Shown here: positions 16,315 to 58,800 of the stretch, in pieces
Layout: every line of letters begins with the position of its first letter
How positions within the stretch are numbered: position 1 is the stretch's first letter
Source: Podarcis tiliguerta
Lineage: Eukaryota
Reading direction: 5' to 3' (one strand)
Length of the DNA: 64,000 bases
Assembly: GCA_965153285.1 (NCBI GenBank)
Contig: OZ229114.1
Notes under the pieces: generated by a model
The model's input: the letters and a program-made list of their open reading frames with translations, nothing else
What the model was told of the DNA's origin: nothing
Databases searched by the model: none
Program-made: the position numbers and the translations under genes

Positions 16315-19294
16315 TTATCCCATCCGTGCCAAGGACAGGTAAGCAATGTATGTCTAGGGAATACATTCTATTTGCTGTGGAATGAAAGGGCTGTGGGGAA
16401 GGTGTCTTGATAGTTGGTACAGGTGAGAGGTCCATAATGGTGTGAAGGAAAAGAGTAATGTCAAGGAAACACTGGTTCTGTGACAATACAAAACATACAA
16501 TCAGGTGCCCTTCAGCAATGAACCAACCTGAAGCCTCATCCTATTTTTGCACTGAAATCAAGATTAAAGTATTACAGAAAAGGCCATTAATTCAAGAACT
16601 CTTCAATAAACAACCAAGGGACCATTATGGGTGCCCAGGAAGATGCTTTGGGAGCCGACTAGGCTTCCTACTTCAAAAGGCGTGTGAAACAGTTAATCAT
16701 ATGATTATTATTTTAATGTGATTAAAAAACAAACCCTGATGTTCCATTTTAACAGGGCCTGAGCAGTGAAACAAAGAACATAGGCTTAAGAGTTCAATGA
16801 TCATGGAAGAAACACGACAGGTTCCAGACTTACCTCTCATTTTCTATGATTCTCTTCCCCCAGAACATTGCACCTAACTCTGAGAAAATGCTGGCAGCTG
16901 CTCTTTTCCATGTATGCTGCTTTAAGAACATTCCAAAGCATCTAAATGGGGAATAATTTGCTAGGAAGTAGCACTACTGAGAGGAAAGCAAGCTGAACAT
17001 GACTCAGCAAGATTGTGCTCAGCTTCATCAAAAGGAACAATGAAGACAGGCCATGAGATGTCATATTTAGCATTGGCTGCATCTCAGCTTCCATACTGTG
17101 GGTAGTTGCTTTCAAATATTTCTCAGCAAAGTGGATGTGAATGAGAGCCAAGATGCATAGATCTAATAAATGCTTAGCCTTGGTCTCTTTGCTGTTAAGC
17201 AGTGCAGACCCATTATCTGCCCACCCTGATGATTTCTGATCACCAACATGACAGCATTCAAAGGTGCAGCTTCCACTGTGTGCCTATTCGTTTTAATACT
17301 AACTTAAGTGTGAGGATTCCTTTGAGTTCATTTCATCTGCTCACACAACTGGGTACATTTCAATGTATGTATGTACTAACCCCCTCATCAGTTTTTGAGA
17401 GAAGCAGTTATTGCTGTTTGCTCCAAGGCTTCTGAACTTCTCCAACTGTACTGCAGAGGCAACATCTTAAAAAATGCTATTAAAAAAAACAAAACAAAAA
17501 ACCATATAGGGCAAAATTCCCACAATTTCAGCTGCTGCAGCTTTGGCACCAGATACCACAAGGTTCACAATAAAATTGTGAATGCTGGTGACCCTGAACA
17601 ACATCAATGGGTATTAATGATTTCCATATGGCCAGAGCAAAGCTGAACAGCATCAGGGGAGCCTGTACTGCACACCTGGAGATTAAATAAGCCAAATTCA
17701 AGACCAAACATAAAACTCCCTGCCTTTCAAAAGGGCAGCTGCTTTAGATTGCCTGTGTCTGGCACAACCAGCTGCAACTCAGCCAAGTGACCCCTAGCAT
17801 CACTCAGGGATGACTAAGTAGAACCACCACTGGACAAATCTTAAACATGGTATTACTCTGGTTCAGTGTGCTCACATATCCCTAACAATTAAGGTGCACA
17901 ATGCTAACTGATGAGAGGTATTGAACACAAAATAAGTTGTCTGATGCGATGTTTATATAGCAAAACTATAACCTTTGTTCTCTCTTCCTAACAGCAGCAC
18001 TGCACACCCATGGCACAATCAACCATGTTACGAAGCAAAAGCAAGGGAATATGGGCTTTGTGTCTGGAAAAGTTATCAGGAAGATAAGTTATAGTTTTGG
18101 GCACTGACAGGATGCCACCTACTCATCCACAATCCCAGTTAAGTCCAGTGCTATTTGGCCCATCTTTTTCATTTAGCTGGACAATCTATACTTGGAATGG
18201 GAAATCTGTGGTCCTCCAAATGTTGTTGGACTCCAGTTCCCATGATCCTTGACTACCGGCAGCCCTTGCTGGGGCTGATGGGAACTGGAGTCCAACAGCA
18301 TTTGGAGCGCCACGCTGGATTACTGACTGTATTGTTCCCTACTGTTTCTTGCACCTTTTTCTGCTCTGTTGCCCCTCTAATAACCTGGTATCTAGCAAGC
18401 TGCAGATTCCTACTGTAGCTTTCCCCTCAGATACAATTTTCAAAACCCTTAGCCAACTACAGTTCCCAGGATTCTTTGAGGGAAGTCATGTCCTTGAAAT
18501 GTGCACCAAATATGCTTTAAACGCCTGGTGTGGATCTGTATATGATATGAGAGGTGCTGTTCTCTGTGATATTTTAAATTGGTGTTAAGAGAAGCCAGGG
18601 CTGGGTTATTTGCTTTGCAGCTATCTTGCAACCGCAGGCATGCGCACAGATGACATGGGAGGGGCTATTTTCTGTAGACTCTCTGTTGAGAACCGGCCCA
18701 TAACTCAGTGGTAGAGCACATTCTTTTCAAGCAGAAGGTCTCAGGGTTAACTCTATATTTCTAGATAGGATTAGTAAAGAGCCCTATCCAAGACCCTGGG
18801 GAACCACTACCAGTACCAACCTAGATGGACCCAAAGTCTGACTTGGTAGCTTCATATGCCCGCAGCAAGTATATCTTGCTGTATTCCTAACACTCAGCTG
18901 GAATAGGCAGATTATAGCGCAGTCATCTTCCTTACAAGAGTTGCTGAAGGCAAAGAACTGGCAGACCAGGTTCAGGCTTCTGTGAAAGGAGGGCTAAATG
19001 GCAAATGCATGAATCACTCAGCTGAGAGCAGAATATTCAGTACATATGCGTTTATGCACACTGTGTGCAGGGGGTTTTTTTTTTGGGGGGGAGGGGAGGC
19101 CGTAGGCCTATACAGCAATGCATTCCCTCTCAAGCAGCTCCAGGAGAGCATTGCTTACTCACTTAAGATCTAGGGAATATTAGGATTGCATGAGCCATGC
19201 ATGACAAGAACACAGAAACAGACACACACACACACACCCTTGCACCTCTCCCAGGAGTCCAGCCACATTACCTAGGCAGGACAAGACTAAGCTA

Positions 19295-21300
<2,006 letters not shown>

Positions 21301-26752: not shown

Positions 26753-27134
26753 TGTTGGGAGATACTGCCAGGGAGATAAAGTCCATCTTGACTCCTCGTC
26801 GTCTCCGGACATCCATTGATCTCCCGCAGACACGCAGTATCAGCAATTAGCGACAGGAGCTCCAGAAATAGCTTCCCTCATTCTAGAGCTCTTGCACACT
26901 CTATCAGCAGAGTTCACACAGCAAAAGTTGCACACAGGAGAGCATTATTTCTAAGTTTATTCAGCGTTGATCAGAACAAAGAAAAATCATGACTGCCTGC
27001 ATGAGGGAGTTCCCGGCAGTGAGAGAGAAACGAAAGCAAAAGACACAACAGAAACATCCTGTGAGACAGGAAATACGCAGGCTGTGACACAAACATCCTG
27101 CTCCCTTTTAAGGTGGAACGGAAATATCCCAACA
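26753..27134 (-). repeat. Copia 3' LTR (AATAAA on - at 26956-26961)
   Basis: Direct repeat of 33105-33486, preceded on the - strand by the PPT. Confidence 0.96.
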
Positions 27135-27148
27135 TCCTCCCCCTTTCC
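27135..27148 (-). other. Polypurine tract GGAAAGGGGGAGGA
   Basis: Purine run directly abutting the 3' LTR. Confidence 0.9.
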
Positions 27149-27171
27149 GTGTAACCTGTAGTACCTGTGGT

Positions 27172-27558
27172 TCAACCCAATTGCAACCTCTGTACATAAA
27201 CCTTAAGTTGTTCTCTGTTAACAACCTTCGACAACAGATCAGCAGGAATTTCATTTCCTGCCATGTAGGACACCCAAATAAGTCCTTTCTGAATACACTC
27301 TCTTGCACGATGTAACTTAATCTGCAAGTACTTGGTTCTTTGCTTGCAACTCTCTGAGTTCAGCAAAGCCAAACAGGATCTATTGTCTTGATACACTTTT
27401 ATAGGACATTTCACAGTAACTCTGATGTCCTTAAACAGTTGCATCAACCATTCACAATCCATGAGTGAAAATGACAGAGCATTGAGTTCTGCTTCACAGG
27501 AACTTAGGCTCACTGTCGTCTGCTTCTTGCACAACCAGTCAAACAGACAGTGGTTGTA
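27172..27558 (-). pseudogene. Separated C-terminal RNase H part of the Copia pol
   Basis: YNHCLFDWLCKKQTTVSLSSCEAE...YQDN...PADLLSK*. Joins in frame to 29330 once the insertion and one TSD copy are removed, giving a 1309-aa ORF. Confidence 0.93.
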
Positions 27559-27633
27559 CATGTAGCCAGTGGCGTAGCGTGGGGGGTGCCAGGGGTGCGA
27601 GCCGCACCGGGCGCAACATTTGGGGGGGCGCAA

Positions 27634-27847
27634 GTCCAGAGGGAAGGAGGTAGAAGGCGGACGCCCTTGGGCGCCCCCAGCCGCGGGCGCGCTGCAGCCG
27701 CGCGCGGAGTTGGTGCTGCCACAGGATTCCCAGTGCCAACACGTTGCCCAGCAGGCCGGCCGCGAAGAGCAGCGAGCCCGGCAGCGCCGACTGGCCGCCC
27801 TCCAGGTGCCGGTTGGCGCGGCAGCGGTAAGCGCCGCCGCCGTCCAT
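27634..27847 (-). pseudogene. PTGDR: Captured 5' coding fragment of a prostanoid receptor (PTGDR/DP1-like): N-terminus, TM1, ICL1 and start of TM2
   Basis: MDGGGAYRCRANRHLEGGQSALPGSLLFAAGLLGNVLALGIL...SAFYLLPSGL, compared with recalled human DP1 [37 protein letters not shown]...SVFYMLVCGL. Confidence 0.8.
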
Positions 27848-29204
27848 GGAGCCGGCGGCGGGCGAGAGTCTCCGCTCTTGGCTAGGCGACGCCGAAGCGG
27901 AGGATCCCGAGTCCGGCGGCGCGGTTCCGCCGGGGGCTCGCCTGCTCCTATCCTTCAAGGAGTTTCTGAGCTCCCGCAAAGGGAGGCTCCTGCTGGCCGA
28001 GGCGGTAAGATGGGGCGCGGAAGGGGGGGCGGGGGCGAATGCATTGCAAACTCGAGTCAAGGGCTGCGCGTGGGGAAGGGTGGCGGAGAGGACGAGGAAG
28101 TGGGGCGGCGGCGGAGAAACTGCAGGCTCTGCTCGCAATCTCTCCTGGCAAAAGGCTTCCACGCCGCGGGAAGTTTGCCAGGAGCAAAGGAGGGAAACGA
28201 GGTCGGGTTCCTTTGCCCTGAACGTGACCCTCTCCCACAGCAATCTTTCCTGTGCCCGTGGACTCAGAATCGAGCTCTGTCCAGGAGGCGCTTACTCGCA
28301 GGTAAACTGGGCGCGCTGGATCGCAGCCTGAGGCCCTTGGAAAACCAGGACCGGTTCCAGCAGGCGTCGTGTAGGATTCGCCTAGAAACGAGGATCTTTT
28401 TTCCCCCCGCCTCGCAGGGACCCCGATGGTGGCCACCACGCCCACCCCGGAGGGGAGAGGGAGAGACAAGAGAAGGCACAGGCCCGGGCGACTTCTGTAC
28501 TAGTAAAAACAAAGAAAGAGGCTTCCGGCACCCTGGAAGCTAAGCAGTTTATTACGGCGCAAACGCTTTTCTGGGCTAGAGTCCACTTTGGAAGCATGAA
28601 GTTGCGGATGTGAATAGCACTCGTGGCGTTGGGGTTGTAGAATAGTGACGTATGAGGGAAAGGAACTGTATAAAGTCAAACAGATAGTGAGGACGGGGGT
28701 TATTAACGGTGGCCTTTTCCAGGCTGGCTGTATGTTGCAACTGAAATCAGTTTGCATCCTGTCATATTCAAGTTGAGCAATTAAAGTGGATTTGGCGCTC
28801 TTGGGCAACGAATGTGCTTAGCACCCCCACACACCCCACAGTCTTTTTAAGTTGAGGGGGAAATGCAGTGGAAACCGTGGGATAACATTTGGTTGACGTG
28901 AGGTCCTGGCAAACAAATCAGAATGAATGCTCAATACATTGGATGTGCCTATAACAGTCCTAAGGGCCGGCCGGGCATGGACTGAGGCAGCCGCTTTGAG
29001 CAGTGGATTCCACACAGGTGTGGTGTCCCACCGCCCTGGAGAAGTGAGCAGAGGCAGCAGCTTCTGCTGAGATGTCGCCACAAAGTACTTTGGCACAACC
29101 CTTGTAAGCAAGGCTTCAGTGGGGGTGGCAACAGGAGGGGCAGTGAAACAACAGGATGAGCCACCCCTGACATCCCAGCAAAGTGTGTGCAAACAGATGA
29201 GGAT
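27848..29204 (-). promoter_or_regulatory. Captured 5'UTR and putative CpG-island promoter of the receptor gene
   Basis: CpG-rich to about 28560 and contiguous upstream of the ATG. TGACG CRE-like sites at about 28646 and 28893. No similarity to Copia. Confidence 0.6.
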
Positions 29205-29329
29205 CAGTGGCGTAGTGTGGGGGGTGCAGGGGGGGCTGGCCACACCGGGCGCAACATCTGGGGGTTAGGGTTAGGGGGCGCAAATTACTTGCCTTGCCCC
29301 AGGTGCTGACAACCCACGCTACGCCACTG
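29205..29329. mobile_element. Complete ~125-bp hAT-type MITE forming the right end of the composite element
   Basis: Has its own left TIR CAGTGGCGTAGTGTGGG at 29205; its first half is homologous to 27567-27633. Confidence 0.85.
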
Positions 29330-30777
29330 CATGTAGCATACTCCAGAAGTGCTTGTACCATCCGTGGTGTCACTTCCAAAACTTGCATCAGCAAAGATTT
29401 CAAGACCTCCAGTCTTCTGACTGGTGAACCTCAGCCTGTAGTGCATAGTCCCTTTCAAATAGCGGGCTATGCGCTTCAGAGCTTTCCAATCCTGAACAGT
29501 AGGATTATTAGCATGTCTGCTAAGCAGGTTAGTGCTTACAGCTATGTCAGGTCTTGAGCATCTAGCAATGAAATTCAACTTGCCTAGAATGCATCTGTAC
29601 AGCGTTGTGTCAGAAAACGCTTCAGCAGTACTGTCTACCTGGTAACCTGTCACCATCGGTGTGTCTGCTGGGTTTGCATCAACCAAATTCAACCTGGTTA
29701 ATACATCAGCAATTTTCTGTGTTTGGTGAACCAGAAAATTACCTGCTTGGTCCCTCTCCACCTGCAGAGAAAGATAGTTGGATACCTCACCAAGATCCTT
29801 CATGTCAAAGTGCTCCTTCAGCTGAGCTAGGGTGCTTTGGTACAAAGCCTGATTCTTCCAGAACATCAGAAGATCATCAACAAAACATAAACAATACAGT
29901 TTGTTTTGCCCCTCCTCCTTGACAAACACACATGGATCAGCTTTGCCCTGGTGAAAACCTAGAGAAAGCAACGTCTCAGTGAGTTTTGTGTTCCAACACC
30001 TGGCACTCTGCTTGAGACCATATAAGGATTTCCGCAGTTTACAGACCATTCCCTTCTGTATCTGCATTCCATCAGGTGGAAGCATATACAGCTCCTCCCC
30101 CAAAATCCCGTACAAAAAAGCTGTATTAATGTCATGATGGGAAACATGCAGTTTCTCCTCCGCAGCAATCTTGAGCATCAGTCGAATGCTCTCATATTTG
30201 ACGGTGGGTGAGTAGGTCACGTGGTAATCCTGTCCTGGTACCTGTGAAAAACCTCTGGCAACCAATCTGGCTTTGTGTCTGACAACCTTGCCATTCTGGT
30301 CTGTCTTGGCCTTGAAGACCCATTTGCTGCCAACCAGTCTCATTCCTGGGACTACCGGTACCAATTCCCAAGTTTGGTTCCTGTTCAAGGAATCAACTTC
30401 AGCCTTCATGGCATCAAGCCATGGCTCAGCATCTTTAGAGGTTAACTCCTGGACCTCTTTGAAGCTTGAAGGTTCCCACACCTTCTTTGAGCTACTAAGA
30501 ACAGCAGTTGCTGTCTTAGCAAACTCATCAGCAAATCTCTTTGGAGGTTTGCCCTTGGTCGCCCTTTCAGATCTGCGTACTAGACGCAAGTCTTCTGGAC
30601 TCATCTCCTCCTTCTTAGGAGAAAAACGACCAATGGTGAACAGTGGTTCTTCCAGTTCATTGTCAGACGCATCAGATGGTCTGACTGAGGCCTTTGCGCT
30701 CTTGAAGTCTGCTGTGTCATCACTGTCACTGACACCAGCAGCCGCACCGCCCACTGAACTGGAATCCGAACTCTGAT

Positions 30778-30809
<32 letters not shown>

Positions 30810-32872
30810 GCTTCCTCAGCTTCTTTAGCATCATCTGCTTTTTGCACATCACCTTCATCCTCCTCTGGGTAACTCTGGAAAATTCCCACATTTTCCCCCC
30901 ACTTAGGATTGTACTCAACACTCCTTGTGAACTTAATGGACTTAGAGTCAGTCATCCATACCCTGTATGCTCCTTTTTCGTACCCCATGAACAAACCATG
31001 TGCCCCACGCTTCCCAAGCTTGTTGCTTTGTGGGGTGTGTACCCACATGTCAGAACCAAAGATTCTCATGTGCTTGACATTTGGTTTCTTACCAAACATC
31101 TTCTCGTAGGGGGTACAACCAATAGGTGATGACAGTCTGCGATTAAACGTGTAAACATACGTCGACAGAGACTCCCCCCAAAACTTCTCAGGGAGATTGG
31201 CATCATGCAACAAGGTTTTCATGCCTTGAAGCAATGTTTGCTTTGCTTGCTCACAAACCTCCCATGGGGATCCAGGACTTGAGAGGCTATGCTGAATTCC
31301 CTTCTCAGTCAGAAAAGCTTCAAACTGCTGAGAAGTGAATTGCCCGCCTCGATCAGTAAACAGACAGCCGATGCGTTTACTGTGAACATTCTCCAACCAA
31401 GCACAGAATGCCTTGAACCTAGGCAACGCTTGCGATTTCTGCTCAAGCATAAACACATGAATGTACCTGGAAAAAGAATCAATTAGAACCATGAAGTACC
31501 TTGCTCCACCCAAAGAGGGCGCAAGAGGACCAACCAGGTCCGCGTGAACAAGCTGGTAGGGTTTGGAAGCCTGCCTGCTAGACTCCTTGCCTTTTGGAGC
31601 AACCTTCACCTTGTTCTCTGCACAAGATACACATTTCATGTGAAACTTACAGGGTTTGATGTTCAAACCCTCAACCAGTTCAGGCATCTTGGCCAGCGCC
31701 TGCCAAGACATGTGACAAAATCTTCTGTGTGCTTCATGAACACATCCTGCATGAAGAACCTTGTTAGTTTGTGCAACACAACAAGAATCAACATTAGACA
31801 CAGCAACAGCATTGTCATCATAAGTTATACAGAACAACCCATCCATAAACTTAGCATGCAAAATGTCCTCTTTGCCTTTCCTGATGACACAGACGTTCCT
31901 CTTGAAGGAAACTTGAAAACCACGCCCAATTAGCTGTGGGACACTGAGCAAATTGTTCACAGCACCTGGAACATAAAGTACATTTTTGATGGTCGTGCGC
32001 AGACTTGCAAGTTTCACAGTCCCTTCTCCTGCAATCTGCAACGTCCTTCCGTCAGCCAGGTGGACCTCACCATCTTGAGGTTTGAAGGAGATAAACAGAT
32101 GCTTATCTTTTGCGAGATGGCGGGTGCACCCAGAATCAACAATAAATCGGGGCTGGGCCTTTGGAGCAGCTTTTCTGGCAAGCAAAACCTTGTTTTCCAC
32201 CGGCGTGGGCTTAAACTGCTTGCCCCCCCGCTCCTGGCCATGAGGCTTGCCTTTAGCCTTTGGTGAAGCTGTGCCAGCAAACAAAGCCTTGTTTTCCACT
32301 GGCGTGGGCTCTTCACCCCCCTTCTGCTTCTGGCCATCTGCAGGTATCTGTCTCTGTTTACCTCTGGCCTTCCGGCCTCTGTAAAGGCGATGACCTTGGT
32401 TCCCACGAGAAACAGAGCTCTCATCTGCCGACTCCTTGGCTCCCCCTGGAGGCTGGAATGCTGTCCCACATTGCTCCCCCTGGAGCTTGCAACCGGTCCC
32501 CTCGGCATCCCTGCATCCACTTGCATTCCGGGAAACAGCCAGGACCTCCGATGCAGTCAAACTCTGGGCTGGGTTGACTGGTAGATGGGCCAGCTTCAAA
32601 GCATTCCACATCCCACGAGCAGTGGTATTGCCAGCTAGTGTGGCAATTTCCTCCAGAGAGACGGACAAGACTATTATGTCAATGGCCCTTGAATCTTGGG
32701 TCTTCCATCTCTCTGTCAGAGGAACTGGAGGGGCCTCACTCACAGTATGCCACACTCCAAACTGTTGCAGTAAACTCTGACACCACTCTGCCCATGCCTC
32801 ATAATTTTGCCGATTTAGCTTTGGGCACTCAACAGCTTCAGAAGCTGTTTGAGAAGCTTGGAAAGACTCCAT
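29285..32872 (-). CDS. Copia gag-pol polyprotein, truncated in RNase H by the insertion (native part 32872-29330)
   Basis: Gag LNRQNYEAW; protease FIVDSGCTRH; integrase HRRFCH..CVSC, HADLVGP, TDRGGQF; RT LYGLKQSARCW, FVDDLL; RNase H start FADASFG..STSG. Confidence 0.95.
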
Positions 32873-33086
32873 CCCAGCTTTTCACTCTAGCCGAGCCCTT
32901 TTCAACTTCAGGGGCTTCTTATCTTGGCTGTCCATAAATCACGAAGCCTTTGGCTTGGCTCCCAGGCCAATTAAGCCAGCCGGACATCAAAGGCACTTGC
33001 CGCGGCAACGAAAAGCCTTACTTTCGCTTTTCCCCACATACCTCAGCATTATGTCGCAGTCTTACTCTCCTGTAAGTGCTGTGTAT

Positions 33087-33100
33087 CTGGGCCCGAAACC
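33087..33100 (-). other. Primer-binding site, half-tRNAiMet type (GGTTTCGGGCCCAG)
   Basis: 4 nt inside the 5' LTR; 12/14 match to the copia-type PBS GGTTATGGGCCCAG. Confidence 0.75.
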
Positions 33101-33104
33101 TTGT

Positions 33105-33486
33105 TGTTGGGAGATACTGCCAGGGAGATAAAGTCCATCTTGACTCCTCGTCGTCTCCGGACATCCATTGATCTCCCGCAGACACGCAGTATCAGCAATT
33201 AGCGACAGGAGCTCCAGAAATAGCTTCCCTCATTCTAGAGCTCTTGCACACTCTATCAGCAGAGTTCACACAGCAAAAGTTGCACACAGGAGAGCATTAT
33301 TTCTAAGTTTATTCAGCGTTGATCAGAACAAAGAAAAATCATGACTGCCTGCATGAGGGAGTTCCCGGCAGTGAGAGAGAAACGAAAGCAAAAGACACAA
33401 CAGAAACATCCTGTGAGACAGGAAATACGCAGGCTGTGACACAAACATCCTGCTCCCTTTTAAGGTGGAACGGAAATATCCCAACA
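33105..33486 (-). repeat. Copia 5' LTR
   Basis: TGTTGGGA...TCCCAACA; appears identical by eye to 26753-27134. Confidence 0.96.
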
Positions 33487-55800: not shown

Positions 55801-58800
55801 CTGAATAGTATATTTCTGCTCTCCCAGTTGATTTTAAGGCAGTAAAGAGAAGCTCAATCAGAATTATTTGGTCACAAGCAAAGGTTTAAACACTTCATCT
55901 TTGGGAAAAAAAAGAAGAGAACAAAGGAAGGATGTGTCTGAACCGCACAAAACCAGGAATACCTGAAAAGAAACTGCCCCATTTATATCCGAAGGCATCA
56001 AGCTTGAAACAGATCTGATCGTTGCTTCTCGCTAGGCCCAGTTTTAGACTATGGAAACTTGAGATATTAGGCACCCCTTGCCTTAAACATTAGAGTCTCT
56101 CAAGGGAACATTTGCTGATAATTCCTATGTTAAATGTATGTATTTATATTACAGGGCATCAGGCTTACAGGACGTAAAACAGTGGTTCAGGCTGCGTACA
56201 GGCCATATATTAAAAACCCATTCTGCAAGAGTCCTGGGGATCCTGTAGTTTATCCACACCCCACCCACAGAGCTACAGTTCCCAGCACCCTTGGCAAACT
56301 ACACTTCGCATGGTTCTTTAAAAGAGAGTTTCCCAGGTGAGCCGTGCCTTGAAAGGAACCACTTTTTAATTTTTCTTTGAGTCTGATGCCCTTTAATATG
56401 AATATATGCGTAGCATTTCTGATATTGCTTACATTTACAGAGGCCAGCCGTGATGGGAATACCCCCCTCCTCTCACCGCCCCCTCCTTTGAAAGCGCTTC
56501 CTGGCGCATCTGGCTCTGGACACTGTCAAAGACAGGCTACTGGGCTCGATGACCCCCTCAGGCTACTGTTGTGAATTTGGAAAGTTCTTCAGTAGTGTCA
56601 ACTTGAGCATAAATACTCGTGAACGAGGAGAGGAAATTGTCCATGTCCACCGTTATTTTCTTGCAAACCAAGGGCCCAGCCTAATCCCCCCCCCCTCCAC
56701 CGCCCCAAGATCTAATCTATTTCTCCGGTAGTCTTTTGTCAGCGCCAGGACTAAGTTCTTCCATCTTCGTGATTCCAAACAGCAATTTTACGCAGCACCT
56801 CTACCATCCTGAACATTTTAAAGCTCAAAGCCGTTTCCTCCAACCCCAAGTACAACTGGGCATCTCCGAAGGCAGAGTTGCACCCACAGCTCGCACATCC
56901 CGAGAGCATGTTCGCACAAGCAGGACTTGGATCATTTGGAGACATTCTGATTTCATGAGAAGGTCGCTCTCCTGAGATCAAGGACAAGTTGTCCATCAGT
57001 TGATATTTCTGCGGTGGGATAAAGGCGATACAAAAACCGCGCGCGGATTTGCTCAAAAGCCTTATGGGGACGCGATCTTACACACACTTACTTGGGAGTG
57101 TAAGCCTCAAGGGGCACACTTCCAAATTAGAAGGCGCAGAATCCGGCACGGCTGGGGTGAGATCCGAAACTCCGGGAGATTTCTTTCACAACCAGCGAGT
57201 CTTACGACTTAAATAAAAACCTTCTGCAGTGTAAAAGAACAACAACAACAACTATTATCTCCAGCGTGCGCACACAACGACAGTGCTCCTAGTGAAACTT
57301 GTTTTCGAACACCGGGAAAGTGCAAAGAGCCAGTTGGACACACCATCTGGGAGCTCTTCGCATACCAAGGAAACCCAGAGGAGGACTGAGGCTAACCCTC
57401 CCCTATAAATGTTTAAAACTAGGCTTAGAGATCGCTCGGTCTCCATAGCAGGGCTCCAATCTATCGAGGTCCGCAAGGCTGACTACAGAAGAAATGTGAC
57501 GGACTTCACCGAGAAACAGCAACTCCCGGGAGGCAATAAATCGAGCCGGTCTCCTTGCCAAACCGACCTGGCCTTTTGCACTCCCACTAAGACAACTGAA
57601 GAGCTGGAGGGCGGATGGGCTGTGGGTGTTTGTGTTCTGCATCCCTTTTGTTTTACCCGGGTTTTCCTTTCCAGGAAAGGAACGAGACTCAGACATAAAG
57701 AACGATTGCATTGCTTAAATGGGTTACTCTGCTTAAAATATATATTCCCGCACTCTGGGACTAAGCAGTTCCAAGCCGGGACAAATCCTGTGGCGCGCGG
57801 TCCCGGGCGACCGGGATCAGCTCTTGGCCAATGCTCGAGCAATATGCATTTCTTTGGCAGTAAAGTCGCCCCTTCTGGACTCGGTTTCCACCGGAGTGCT
57901 AAGCACGAGATCGCATTCCTGCAACCTCGGGCACGTTTACTCGCAAGTCACTTCCGCGGCGTTGAACTGGCGGCTTTCCCGCAGAAACAGGGCGCGAAAA
58001 CAGCCCAAGTGAAGACGCCGCGCGTAGTTTGACAGGGAGAGGGGAGAGAAAGACCCTTCAGTCAAATAGGGCTTACAGCTGGATTAATAAATGGCCCTGT
58101 GACACCCCCTCTCTCTTAGGCCCCCTCCCCGCAAATGCAAAAAACTCCGATTCAAAGGGAAGCACATCCCGCCTGCCCTCTGGCTCATCCCTAAGCAAAC
58201 GGATGGAGAACCTGTCTCTCTCCCTCCCACAGTCCATAGCCCATTAGCCCCGGCCAGCGTGTCTAGCGGTAAGGAGCGGCGGTAGTTGGAGACCTACAAC
58301 ATGTGGAGGGTCACAGGATCCCCGGTCCGTTGCGGGGTGGGTGGGGGAGATTCCCTTGGCCGGGGTAAGGCCCCTCCACCGAAAACGTAGCAGAAGGGAG
58401 AGAGATCTCTTCTCCCGTCGGGGAGATGCCGCGTTACCCATAGATGAGAACCATCCTCCCGGGAACGACTCACCCGCGCTGCGTCGGGGCTCGGATTCTT
58501 TCCCCTTTTTCTCCTCCCGGGAGCGCCGGGACTTCCTCCTTTCGTCCACGCCAGTCTCAGCACCGAAGGCAAAGGCTGGCAGTGGGGTAGGGTGGGGTGT
58601 TGGTGGAGCTGCAGGGCACCCCTGCTCCCCTCCAGCCCCCAGATTTTTGACTGTCCAGAGCCAAAGGCCGGCGGAAAAGATTGTGTGAACGCAGAGACAG
58701 ACCCCTGCTTACCTACCCATCTCTTGGGCTACTCTTGCGCGAGGTTTCCGCGTCGGGGCTGGGGAGAGACGAGGCAACGACGGTCAGGGGGTTCCCATTA

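What the first reader, a model, noticed from the sequence alone, without database searches (positions are those of the whole stretch)
27559..29337. Gene-capturing hAT-type 'Pack' element carrying a prostanoid receptor (PTGDR-like) promoter and exon fragment
Seen: 1763 bp bounded by perfect 17-bp TIRs and an exact 8-bp TSD (CATGTAGC). There is no transposase; about 1.57 kb of the interior reads as upstream region, 5'UTR, ATG and ~72 codons of a prostanoid GPCR. Known: 8-bp TSDs with CAG-start TIRs typify hAT elements. PTGDR lies beside PTGER2 in mammals, not in the GOT1-CNNM1-HPSE2 block. Pack-MULE/Pack-TIR gene capture is well described in plants and much less so in vertebrates. Inference: a recently mobile lizard hAT MITE family has transduplicated host gene starts.
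Basis: partly seen in the sequence, partly recalled or inferred. Interest (0 to 1): 0.92.

Follow-up and report, generated by a model that had tools for sequence, protein, structure and literature searches.

The report
Lizard hAT element carrying two gene fragments
A 1.76-kb transposase-less hAT-type DNA transposon sits inside a young Copia retrotransposon of a lacertid lizard and carries pieces of two unrelated host genes (the start of the prostaglandin D2 receptor gene and exon 1 plus intron 1 of CMTM3), a clear squamate example of a known but rare kind of transposon-mediated gene-fragment capture.

Summary
The boundaries are real. There are perfect 17-nt TIRs and an exact 8-nt duplication (CATGTAGC). 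Other copies of the host Copia in four sequencing runs lack the insert exactly (skip of 1771 nt, 8 ambiguous letters).

The PTGDR (DP1) call is right. The peptide is 66/67 identical to Podarcis muralis PTGDR, and in the PDB it matches DP1 far better than EP2 or IP.

The cargo is not 1.57 kb of PTGDR promoter and exon. It has four parts after the 78-nt left end:
- 224 nt of PTGDR: 21 nt of leader plus 67 codons, on the minus strand.
- A 22-nt junction of unknown origin.
- 1314 nt of CMTM3: exon 1 codons 4-41 (100% identical to Podarcis CMTM3), the splice donor and about 1.2 kb of intron 1, on the plus strand.
- A complete 125-nt MITE that supplies the right end.

No promoter of either gene is present.

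In the window's species the PTGDR piece lies on short contigs about 20 times deeper than single-copy neighbours. In two sister species it is single copy. The CMTM3 piece is about one extra copy. I read this as a second-generation derivative of a multicopy Pack-hAT family, made by template switching.

The kind is known (Pack-TIR, Tan et al. 2021); this is a new member.

The parts
27559..27566 (.). Left copy of the 8-nt target site duplication CATGTAGC
   Evidence: Read directly. The empty-site joint 27558->29330 has 8 letters that fit either side, in 4 runs.
27567..27644 (+). Left end of a hAT-like non-autonomous element (17-nt TIR at 27567-27583 plus subterminal sequence), a partial 'half-MITE'
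   Evidence: Perfect inverted repeat with 29313-29329. It is 87% identical over 60 nt to the 5' half of the inner MITE. One X1 contig matches up to 27647 and then diverges (table 7).
27645..27868 (-). PTGDR (prostaglandin D2 receptor, DP1) fragment: 21 nt of 5' leader, the ATG at 27847 and 67 codons plus 2 nt (N-terminus, TM1, first intracellular loop, start of TM2)
   Evidence: PDB DP1 at E 2.4e-8. It is 66/67 identical to Podarcis muralis PTGDR and 95.5% to Zootoca. The homology borders are sharp. Contigs of 4 runs align to exactly 27645-27868 and run on unlike at both ends.
27869..27890 (.). 22-nt junction segment of unknown origin (filler or a strongly altered PTGDR leader)
   Evidence: No listed contig piece of the 4 runs lies on it (table 8). 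No repeat of it longer than chance occurs in the window.
27891..28004 (+). CMTM3 exon 1, codons 4-41. The start codon, 5'UTR and promoter are absent.
   Evidence: 39/39 residues (codons 4-41 plus one read-through residue past the donor) are identical to Podarcis muralis and P. lilfordi CMTM3, starting exactly at 27891. Contig alignments also start at 27891.
28005..29204 (+). First ~1.2 kb of CMTM3 intron 1, starting with the GTAAG donor
   Evidence: The donor GCG|GTAAGA is at 28005 and the protein continues with VLSFIIF..., which is not encoded here. Contigs of X4, X5 and X7 align up to 29204 and then run on unlike for 381, 99 and 369 letters. CpG o/e falls from 0.97 to 0.22 along it.
29205..29329 (+). 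Complete 125-nt MITE of the same family. Its right TIR (29313-29329) is the right end of the whole element.
   Evidence: It has its own left TIR at 29205-29221 (1 mismatch) and its right TIR. Summed contig depth is about 10^5-10^6 in all 4 runs, so the family is very abundant. X1 contig 29002-29229 crosses the 29204/29205 junction by 25 nt with no differences.
29330..29337 (.). Right copy of the target site duplication CATGTAGC
26753..33486 (-). Host of the insertion: a full-length Ty1/Copia-type LTR retrotransposon (LTRs 26753-27134 and 33105-33486, 5-nt TSD TTGTG). The element interrupts its RNase H region.
   Evidence: The LTRs are 100% identical. Pfam finds Retrotran_gag_2, rve and RVT_2 in ORF 29285-32872. 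The pol frame resumes in the same codon phase after the left TSD copy.

Best explanation
The element is a non-autonomous hAT-type 'Pack' transposon of 1763 nt. It is inserted, with an 8-nt target duplication, in the RNase H region of a very young Copia retrotransposon about 5.7 kb upstream of a CNNM gene in a lacertid (Podarcis-like) genome.

Its cargo is two unrelated host gene fragments joined head to head. One is the first 224 nt of the PTGDR transcript region, on the minus strand. The other is CMTM3 exon 1 (codons 4-41) plus 1.2 kb of intron 1, on the plus strand. A whole MITE follows and supplies the right end.

Inferred origin:
- A Pack element carrying the PTGDR 5' piece already existed and had multiplied to roughly 15-25 copies in this species.
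- During repair of a transposase-made break, DNA synthesis copied the left end and PTGDR piece of such a copy.
- Synthesis then switched template to the CMTM3 locus, leaving a 22-nt junction.
- The product was joined to the terminus of an ordinary MITE.

The composite either arose at this site or moved here once by cut-and-paste. It carries no promoter of either gene and most likely has no function.

Shown: the borders, the TSD, the empty site, the identities and borders of both cargo pieces, and their separate parental contigs. Inferred: the multicopy precursor, the template-switch mechanism and the order of events.
For: - TIRs and TSD.
- Exact empty site in paralogous Copia copies of 4 runs: joint 27558->29330, skips 1771, both = 8.
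- PTGDR piece.
- CMTM3 piece.
- In all 4 runs the two pieces lie on different contigs that continue unlike the window at 27645, 27868, 27891 and 29204. Examples are X5 records of 1655 and 1561 letters and X7 records of 1587, 1202 and 673 letters.
- PTGDR gene models sit on ~137-139-Mb contigs and the CMTM3 cluster on an ~85-Mb contig in Podarcis assemblies.
- The left end and the inner MITE are only 87% alike, so they come from different family members.
- In the window's species (X1, X4) the PTGDR piece lies on short contigs (344 and 295 letters). These break at 27645, run 120 letters beyond 27868 unlike the window, and have depth 326 and 240 against 13-27 for the CMTM3 piece. In species B and D the piece sits in long contigs at depth 10-16.
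- X1 carries the CMTM3|MITE junction.
- The cargo keeps CpG o/e near 1, and the host Copia has identical LTRs, so the event is recent.
Against: - No contig listed by read laying bridges 27644/27645 or 27868-27891. The 29204/29205 junction is crossed by only 25 nt, below the tool's 31-nt rule. The internal joins therefore rest mainly on the assembly.
- The copy number of the PTGDR piece is inferred from contig depth, which the tool warns is a poor measure. No second copy could be read.
- The composite itself looks single-copy, so it is not shown ever to have transposed as a unit.
- No autonomous hAT with these TIRs was found, so the superfamily call rests on TSD length and the TIR start.
- The exact start of the inner MITE at its first base is not what simple template switching predicts. 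It fits joining to a transposase-cut end or a macrotransposition better.
Confidence: 0.75

Rival explanations
1. One reading: one capture event took about 1.57 kb of the PTGDR locus (promoter, 5'UTR, ATG and about 72 codons) into a hAT MITE.
For: The PTGDR peptide is real. The adjoining DNA is CpG-island-like.
Against: PTGDR homology stops 21 nt upstream of the ATG in the protein comparison with four lacertid gene models and in contigs of 4 runs. The adjoining DNA encodes CMTM3 codons 4-41 at 100% identity on the other strand, followed by a splice donor. The two genes' gene models/contigs are of very different size in Podarcis assemblies (~137-139 Mb vs ~85 Mb).
Confidence: 0.03
2. Macrotransposition. 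A truncated PTGDR-carrying element and an ordinary MITE lay 1.3 kb apart in direct orientation at the CMTM3 locus. The transposase paired the outer left and right TIRs and moved both, with the CMTM3 DNA between them, to the Copia.
For: The right part is a complete MITE starting at its first base, directly abutting CMTM3 intron DNA. The two TE parts come from different family members, being 87% alike. An 8-nt TSD surrounds the outer ends only. Closely linked hAT (Ac/Ds) elements are known to do this in maize (my own knowledge).
Against: CMTM3 contigs of X4 (same species), X5 and X7 continue past 29204 without a MITE. The left partner would have had to sit in CMTM3 coding exon 1 and to lack its right end. 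There is no MITE right terminus at 27868-27890.
Confidence: 0.12
3. Assembly artefact. The internal joins (TE|PTGDR, PTGDR|CMTM3, CMTM3|MITE) are chimeric, created at repeats, and only a simple MITE sits at this site.
For: No listed short-read contig bridges the first two joins. The MITE family is extremely abundant.
Against: X1 holds a zero-difference contig over 29002-29229 that crosses the CMTM3|MITE join. X1 carries window-type and parental-type variants of the CMTM3 piece side by side (28298: depth 11.6 of 25.4). PTGDR and CMTM3 share no repeat that could cause a mis-join at 27868-27891.
Confidence: 0.07

Closest known systems
Pack-TIRs of animals, especially Pack-hAT elements (Tan et al. 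2021, Nat Commun, PMC8277862)
   Same: It is a non-autonomous TIR element whose interior is host sequence with identifiable parental copies. hAT is the most common carrier there (208 of 370). The cargo is GC-rich. Template-switch and gap-filling models apply.
   Different: That survey found no Pack-TIR in its only lizard genome (anoCar2: 0) and only 4 multicopy cases in 100 animal genomes. This element carries fragments of two genes head to head, ends in a whole MITE, and seems to derive from a family of about 20 copies.
Pack-MULEs of rice and other plants
   Same: They carry fragments of several unrelated genes inside one element, prefer GC-rich 5' gene ends, and can form chimeric ORFs (my own knowledge and PMC8277862).
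   Different: They belong to a different superfamily (Mutator, 9-11-nt TSD, long TIRs). They number in the thousands per genome and their transcription is documented, which is not shown here.
Ac/Ds macrotransposons and fractured Ds elements of maize (hAT)
   Same: Two hAT ends from different copies bracket host DNA and move as one unit with an 8-nt TSD.
   Different: There both partners are normally complete or defined fractured elements at a known donor locus. No donor allele was seen here.

Membership tests
hAT superfamily (non-autonomous member) | 8-nt target site duplication | tested here: met
   CATGTAGC lies on both sides. The empty-site joint has 8 ambiguous letters in 4 runs.
hAT superfamily (non-autonomous member) | Short TIRs (about 10-25 nt) beginning YARNG | tested here: met
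   The perfect TIR is 17 nt and begins CAGTG. The consensus itself is from my own knowledge.
hAT superfamily (non-autonomous member) | An autonomous partner encoding a hAT transposase (BED finger, DDE/RNase H-like core, hAT dimerisation domain) with the same termini | not testable with these tools
   No such ORF lies in the window.
Pack-TIR (gene-fragment-carrying TIR element) | Internal sequence is host DNA, not transposase or TE sequence | tested here: met
   The PTGDR piece is 66/67 identical to the Podarcis protein. The CMTM3 piece matches at 39/39 (codons 4-41 plus one read-through residue) and is followed by a donor and intron.
Pack-TIR (gene-fragment-carrying TIR element) | A parental copy of the cargo exists elsewhere and extends beyond the captured borders | tested here: met
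   Long contigs of X4, X5 and X7 run on past 27645, 27868, 27891 and 29204. Full-length PTGDR and CMTM3 genes are annotated in Podarcis.
Pack-TIR (gene-fragment-carrying TIR element) | Multicopy, i.e. the cargo-bearing element itself has transposed | tested here: inconclusive
   In the window's species only, the PTGDR piece lies on short contigs of depth 240-326 against about 14 for single-copy sequence. The composite with CMTM3 is about one extra copy. No second copy could be read.
Prostaglandin D2 receptor DP1 (PTGDR) as source of the GPCR piece | Closer to DP1 than to EP2 or IP, and orthologous to lacertid PTGDR | tested here: met
   PDB matches are DP1 2.4e-8, EP2 0.013 and IP 0.036. Identity is 98.5% to P. 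muralis, 95.5% to Zootoca and 64% to Sceloporus.

The most novel reading that the evidence does not exclude
A hAT family is active now, or was until very recently, in one Podarcis species. It is repeatedly building and amplifying gene-fragment carriers. One family with the PTGDR 5' end reached about 20 copies after the split from sister species, and members keep acquiring further gene pieces (here CMTM3). That would be ongoing transposon-driven exon shuffling in an amniote, with insertions still polymorphic between individuals.
Probability: 0.4. Interest if true: 0.7.

Novelty: new member of a known kind. Interest (0 to 1): 0.5.

Why it matters
Cut-and-paste DNA transposons are thought to be extinct or nearly so in most amniotes. 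Gene-fragment capture by them is well documented in plants but sparse in vertebrates. The one broad animal survey found no case in a lizard and only four multicopy cases in 100 genomes.

This element is a cleanly delimited, very young, two-gene Pack-hAT. It has signs of a species-specific multicopy precursor and shows the capture architecture junction by junction. It also marks lacertid genomes as a place to study active hAT transposition and chimeric gene formation. In itself it is most likely a non-functional insertion.

Tried and rejected
- The look-up of encoding contigs, for the PTGDR loci of P. muralis, P. raffonei and P. lilfordi, was closed. The parental DNA could not be fetched, and microhomology at the junctions could not be read.
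- The search for homologous proteins with the 102-aa chimeric ORF found nothing. This says nothing about other copies.
- The search of earlier findings by sequence was blank twice, and had no note for CMTM3.
- Rfam found no RNA family in 27400-29500.
- No other copy of the cargo or of the MITE lies in the window.
- The 22-nt junction has no above-chance source in the window.
- A literature search for the TIR string and for Pack-TIRs in squamates found nothing relevant.
- Expression could not be tested.
- I rejected reading 'YLLPSGL' as PTGDR TM2, because homology ends at ...AFYLL.
I compared only codon phase, from existing translations.

Full report
**Observation**

CAGTGGCGTAGCGTGGG at 27567-27583 is perfectly complementary to 29313-29329. 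CATGTAGC stands immediately outside both, at 27559-27566 and 29330-29337.

The TIR pattern is expected 0.07 times in shuffles of the window at up to 3 mismatches and occurs 4 times. Three of those occurrences are in this element. There is no transposase-like ORF.

**Host of the insertion and the empty site**

The element interrupts a full-length Ty1/Copia-type retrotransposon on the minus strand.
- Its gag-pol ORF at 29285-32872 carries Retrotran_gag_2, rve and RVT_2.
- Its LTRs at 26753-27134 and 33105-33486 are 100% identical over 382 nt.
- It has a 5-nt TSD, TTGTG.
- The pol frame stands in the same codon phase at both copies of the 8-nt duplication...SGVCYM before the element and YNHCLFDW... 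after it.

I laid contigs of four public runs on 26800-30100. Two runs were of the window's species (coded A) and one each of sister species B and D. All four gave a joint from 27558 to 29330 that skips 1771 nt, with 8 letters fitting either side. These are other Copia copies without the insert. Since 1771 = 1763 + 8, this is the expected empty site, and the insertion and its target duplication are real.

**The GPCR piece**

The minus-strand ORF from the ATG at 27847 matches solved DP1 structures at E 2.4e-8, EP2 at 0.013 and IP at 0.036.

A library-wide search led to squamate PTGDR. The first 67 residues are 66/67 identical to Podarcis muralis PTGDR, 95.5% to Zootoca and 64% to Sceloporus. 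The genome is therefore a lacertid close to Podarcis. The single change is G55R.

The homology has sharp borders.
- It starts at LSPAAGS, 7 codons (21 nt) upstream of the ATG.
- It ends at ...SAFYLL.
- Four lacertid gene models that read through the leader all have ...PAPSRRT before LSPAAGS, while the window has ...SPSQERR.

Contigs of all four runs align to exactly 27645-27868 and run on unlike at both ends. Only 224 nt are PTGDR, and no promoter is included.

**The rest of the cargo**

The plus strand of 27891-28004 encodes AEAEDPESGG...LLLAEA and is followed by GTAAG. This is 100% identical to codons 4-41 of CMTM3 of P. muralis and P. lilfordi, starting exactly at 27891. The proteins continue with VLSFIIF..., which is not encoded here, so 28005-29204 is intron 1.

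Contigs again start at 27891. In X4, X5 and X7 they end their match at 29204 and continue unlike for 381, 99 and 369 letters.

In every run the PTGDR and CMTM3 pieces lie on different contigs. In X5 these are records of 1655 and 1561 letters, each extending far beyond the joint. In Podarcis assemblies the PTGDR gene models sit on contigs of ~137-139 Mb, and the longest contig on record for the CMTM3 cluster is ~85 Mb.

The 22 nt between the pieces (27869-27890) lie on nothing listed and have no above-chance source in the window. Their translation (PSQERR) faintly recalls the PTGDR leader (PSRRT). Whether they are filler or an altered leader is open.

**The transposon parts**

The right 125 nt (29205-29329) are a whole MITE with its own left TIR, which has 1 mismatch. 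The left 78 nt are only a 5' part and are 87% identical to it, so they come from another family member. The family is very abundant in all four species, with summed contig depth of 10^5-10^6.

The layout is:
- left end, 78 nt
- PTGDR, 224 nt, minus strand
- junction, 22 nt
- CMTM3, 1314 nt, plus strand
- MITE, 125 nt

These sum to 1763 nt.

**Copy number and age**

In the window's species the PTGDR piece lies on short contigs of 344 and 295 letters. They break at 27645, extend 120 letters beyond 27868 unlike the window, and have depth 326 and 240. The CMTM3 piece and diverged single Copia copies have depth 13-27. In species B and D the PTGDR piece sits inside long contigs at depth 10-16.

The tool warns that depth is a poor measure, so this is an inference. 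Together with the contig breaks, it suggests roughly 15-25 copies in this species only, most of them carrying more PTGDR leader than this copy. An earlier, unchecked note of this scan reports another PTGDR-carrying Pack beside BCL2 on another piece of the genome.

The CMTM3 piece is about two loci in X1. Window-type and parental-type variants stand side by side at 28298, at depths of about 13.8 and 11.6. A zero-difference contig at 29002-29229 crosses the CMTM3|MITE join by 25 nt. In X4 only the parental type is seen, which hints at polymorphism, but contigs cannot show absence.

The window differs from the X4 parental CMTM3 contigs at about 10 of 1282 aligned sites. The difference to species B and D is about 2.3-2.4%. 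The cargo keeps CpG o/e near 1.0. All of this points to a recent event.

**Mechanism (inferred)**

The simplest account is serial template switching during repair of a transposase-made break.
- Synthesis ran through the left end and the PTGDR piece of a pre-existing Pack-PTGDR copy.
- It then jumped to CMTM3 exon 1, leaving 22 odd nucleotides.
- It ran 1.3 kb into intron 1.
- The product was joined to the first base of a MITE, perhaps a transposase-cut terminus.

[quoted passage not shown] The data cannot say whether the composite formed at this site or moved here once, because it is single-copy. Macrotransposition from a CMTM3 donor allele is a minority alternative, and no such allele was seen.

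**Function**

Neither promoter is present. The PTGDR ORF runs on into the TE end and the Copia for 102 codons. There is no evidence of expression, because no RNA run of this species was listed. The insertion lies about 5.7 kb upstream of a CNNM-type first exon at 19292-21094 (Pfam Ig_CNNM4_N and CNNM). I take it to be a neutral, non-functional insertion.

**Comparison and novelty**

This is a Pack-TIR of the hAT type, a kind described in animals by Tan et al. 2021. They found 370 cases in 100 genomes, 208 of them hAT and only 4 multicopy. They found none in the one lizard genome surveyed. I found no report for squamates.

The hAT assignment rests on the 8-nt TSD and the CAGTG terminus. An autonomous partner could not be sought. 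The finding is a new member of a known kind, with three uncommon traits: two gene fragments, a whole-MITE end, and a probable multicopy precursor.

**Limits**

- The joins at 27644/45 and 27868-91 have no listed bridging contig.

Noticed in passing
window 19292-21094 (minus): A large GC-rich first exon of a CNNM-type metal transporter (Pfam Ig_CNNM4_N and CNNM). The Copia and Pack insertion lies about 5.7 kb upstream of it.
   Followed up: partly
window 26753-33486 (minus): A full-length Copia-type LTR retrotransposon with 100% identical 382-nt LTRs and TSD TTGTG. Its gag-pol is open up to the Pack insertion. Many near-identical copies exist in all four species sampled, so the family looks recently active.
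   Followed up: partly
window 27870-27876 and 27896-27902: A 7-nt inverted repeat (CTCCGCT / AGCGGAG) straddles the 22-nt junction and the start of the CMTM3 piece. It could be a snap-back or templated-repair trace, or chance.
   Followed up: no
window 28687-29019: Inside the CMTM3 intron piece, contig depth rises to 100-1800 in all four runs, and several contigs skip about 100-120 nt near 28792-28910. This suggests an older interspersed repeat in the intron.
   Followed up: no
window 29264-29276: The inner MITE holds TTAGGGTTAGGG, two telomere-type units. Loose ends of other family members show a single GGTTAGGGGGCGCAAAT, so this is a small internal duplication of the family sequence.
   Followed up: partly
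window 58580-58596: A weak match to the TIR (2 mismatches). The alignment shows no further likeness to the MITE family.
   Followed up: partly
same genome, other pieces (earlier notes): First readers flagged many other hAT/MITE elements with CpG-island or first-exon-like cargo in this genome (SPR exon 1, FLT4 intron, SMARCC1 intron and others). If real, capture of gene 5' ends by this family is frequent.
   Followed up: no
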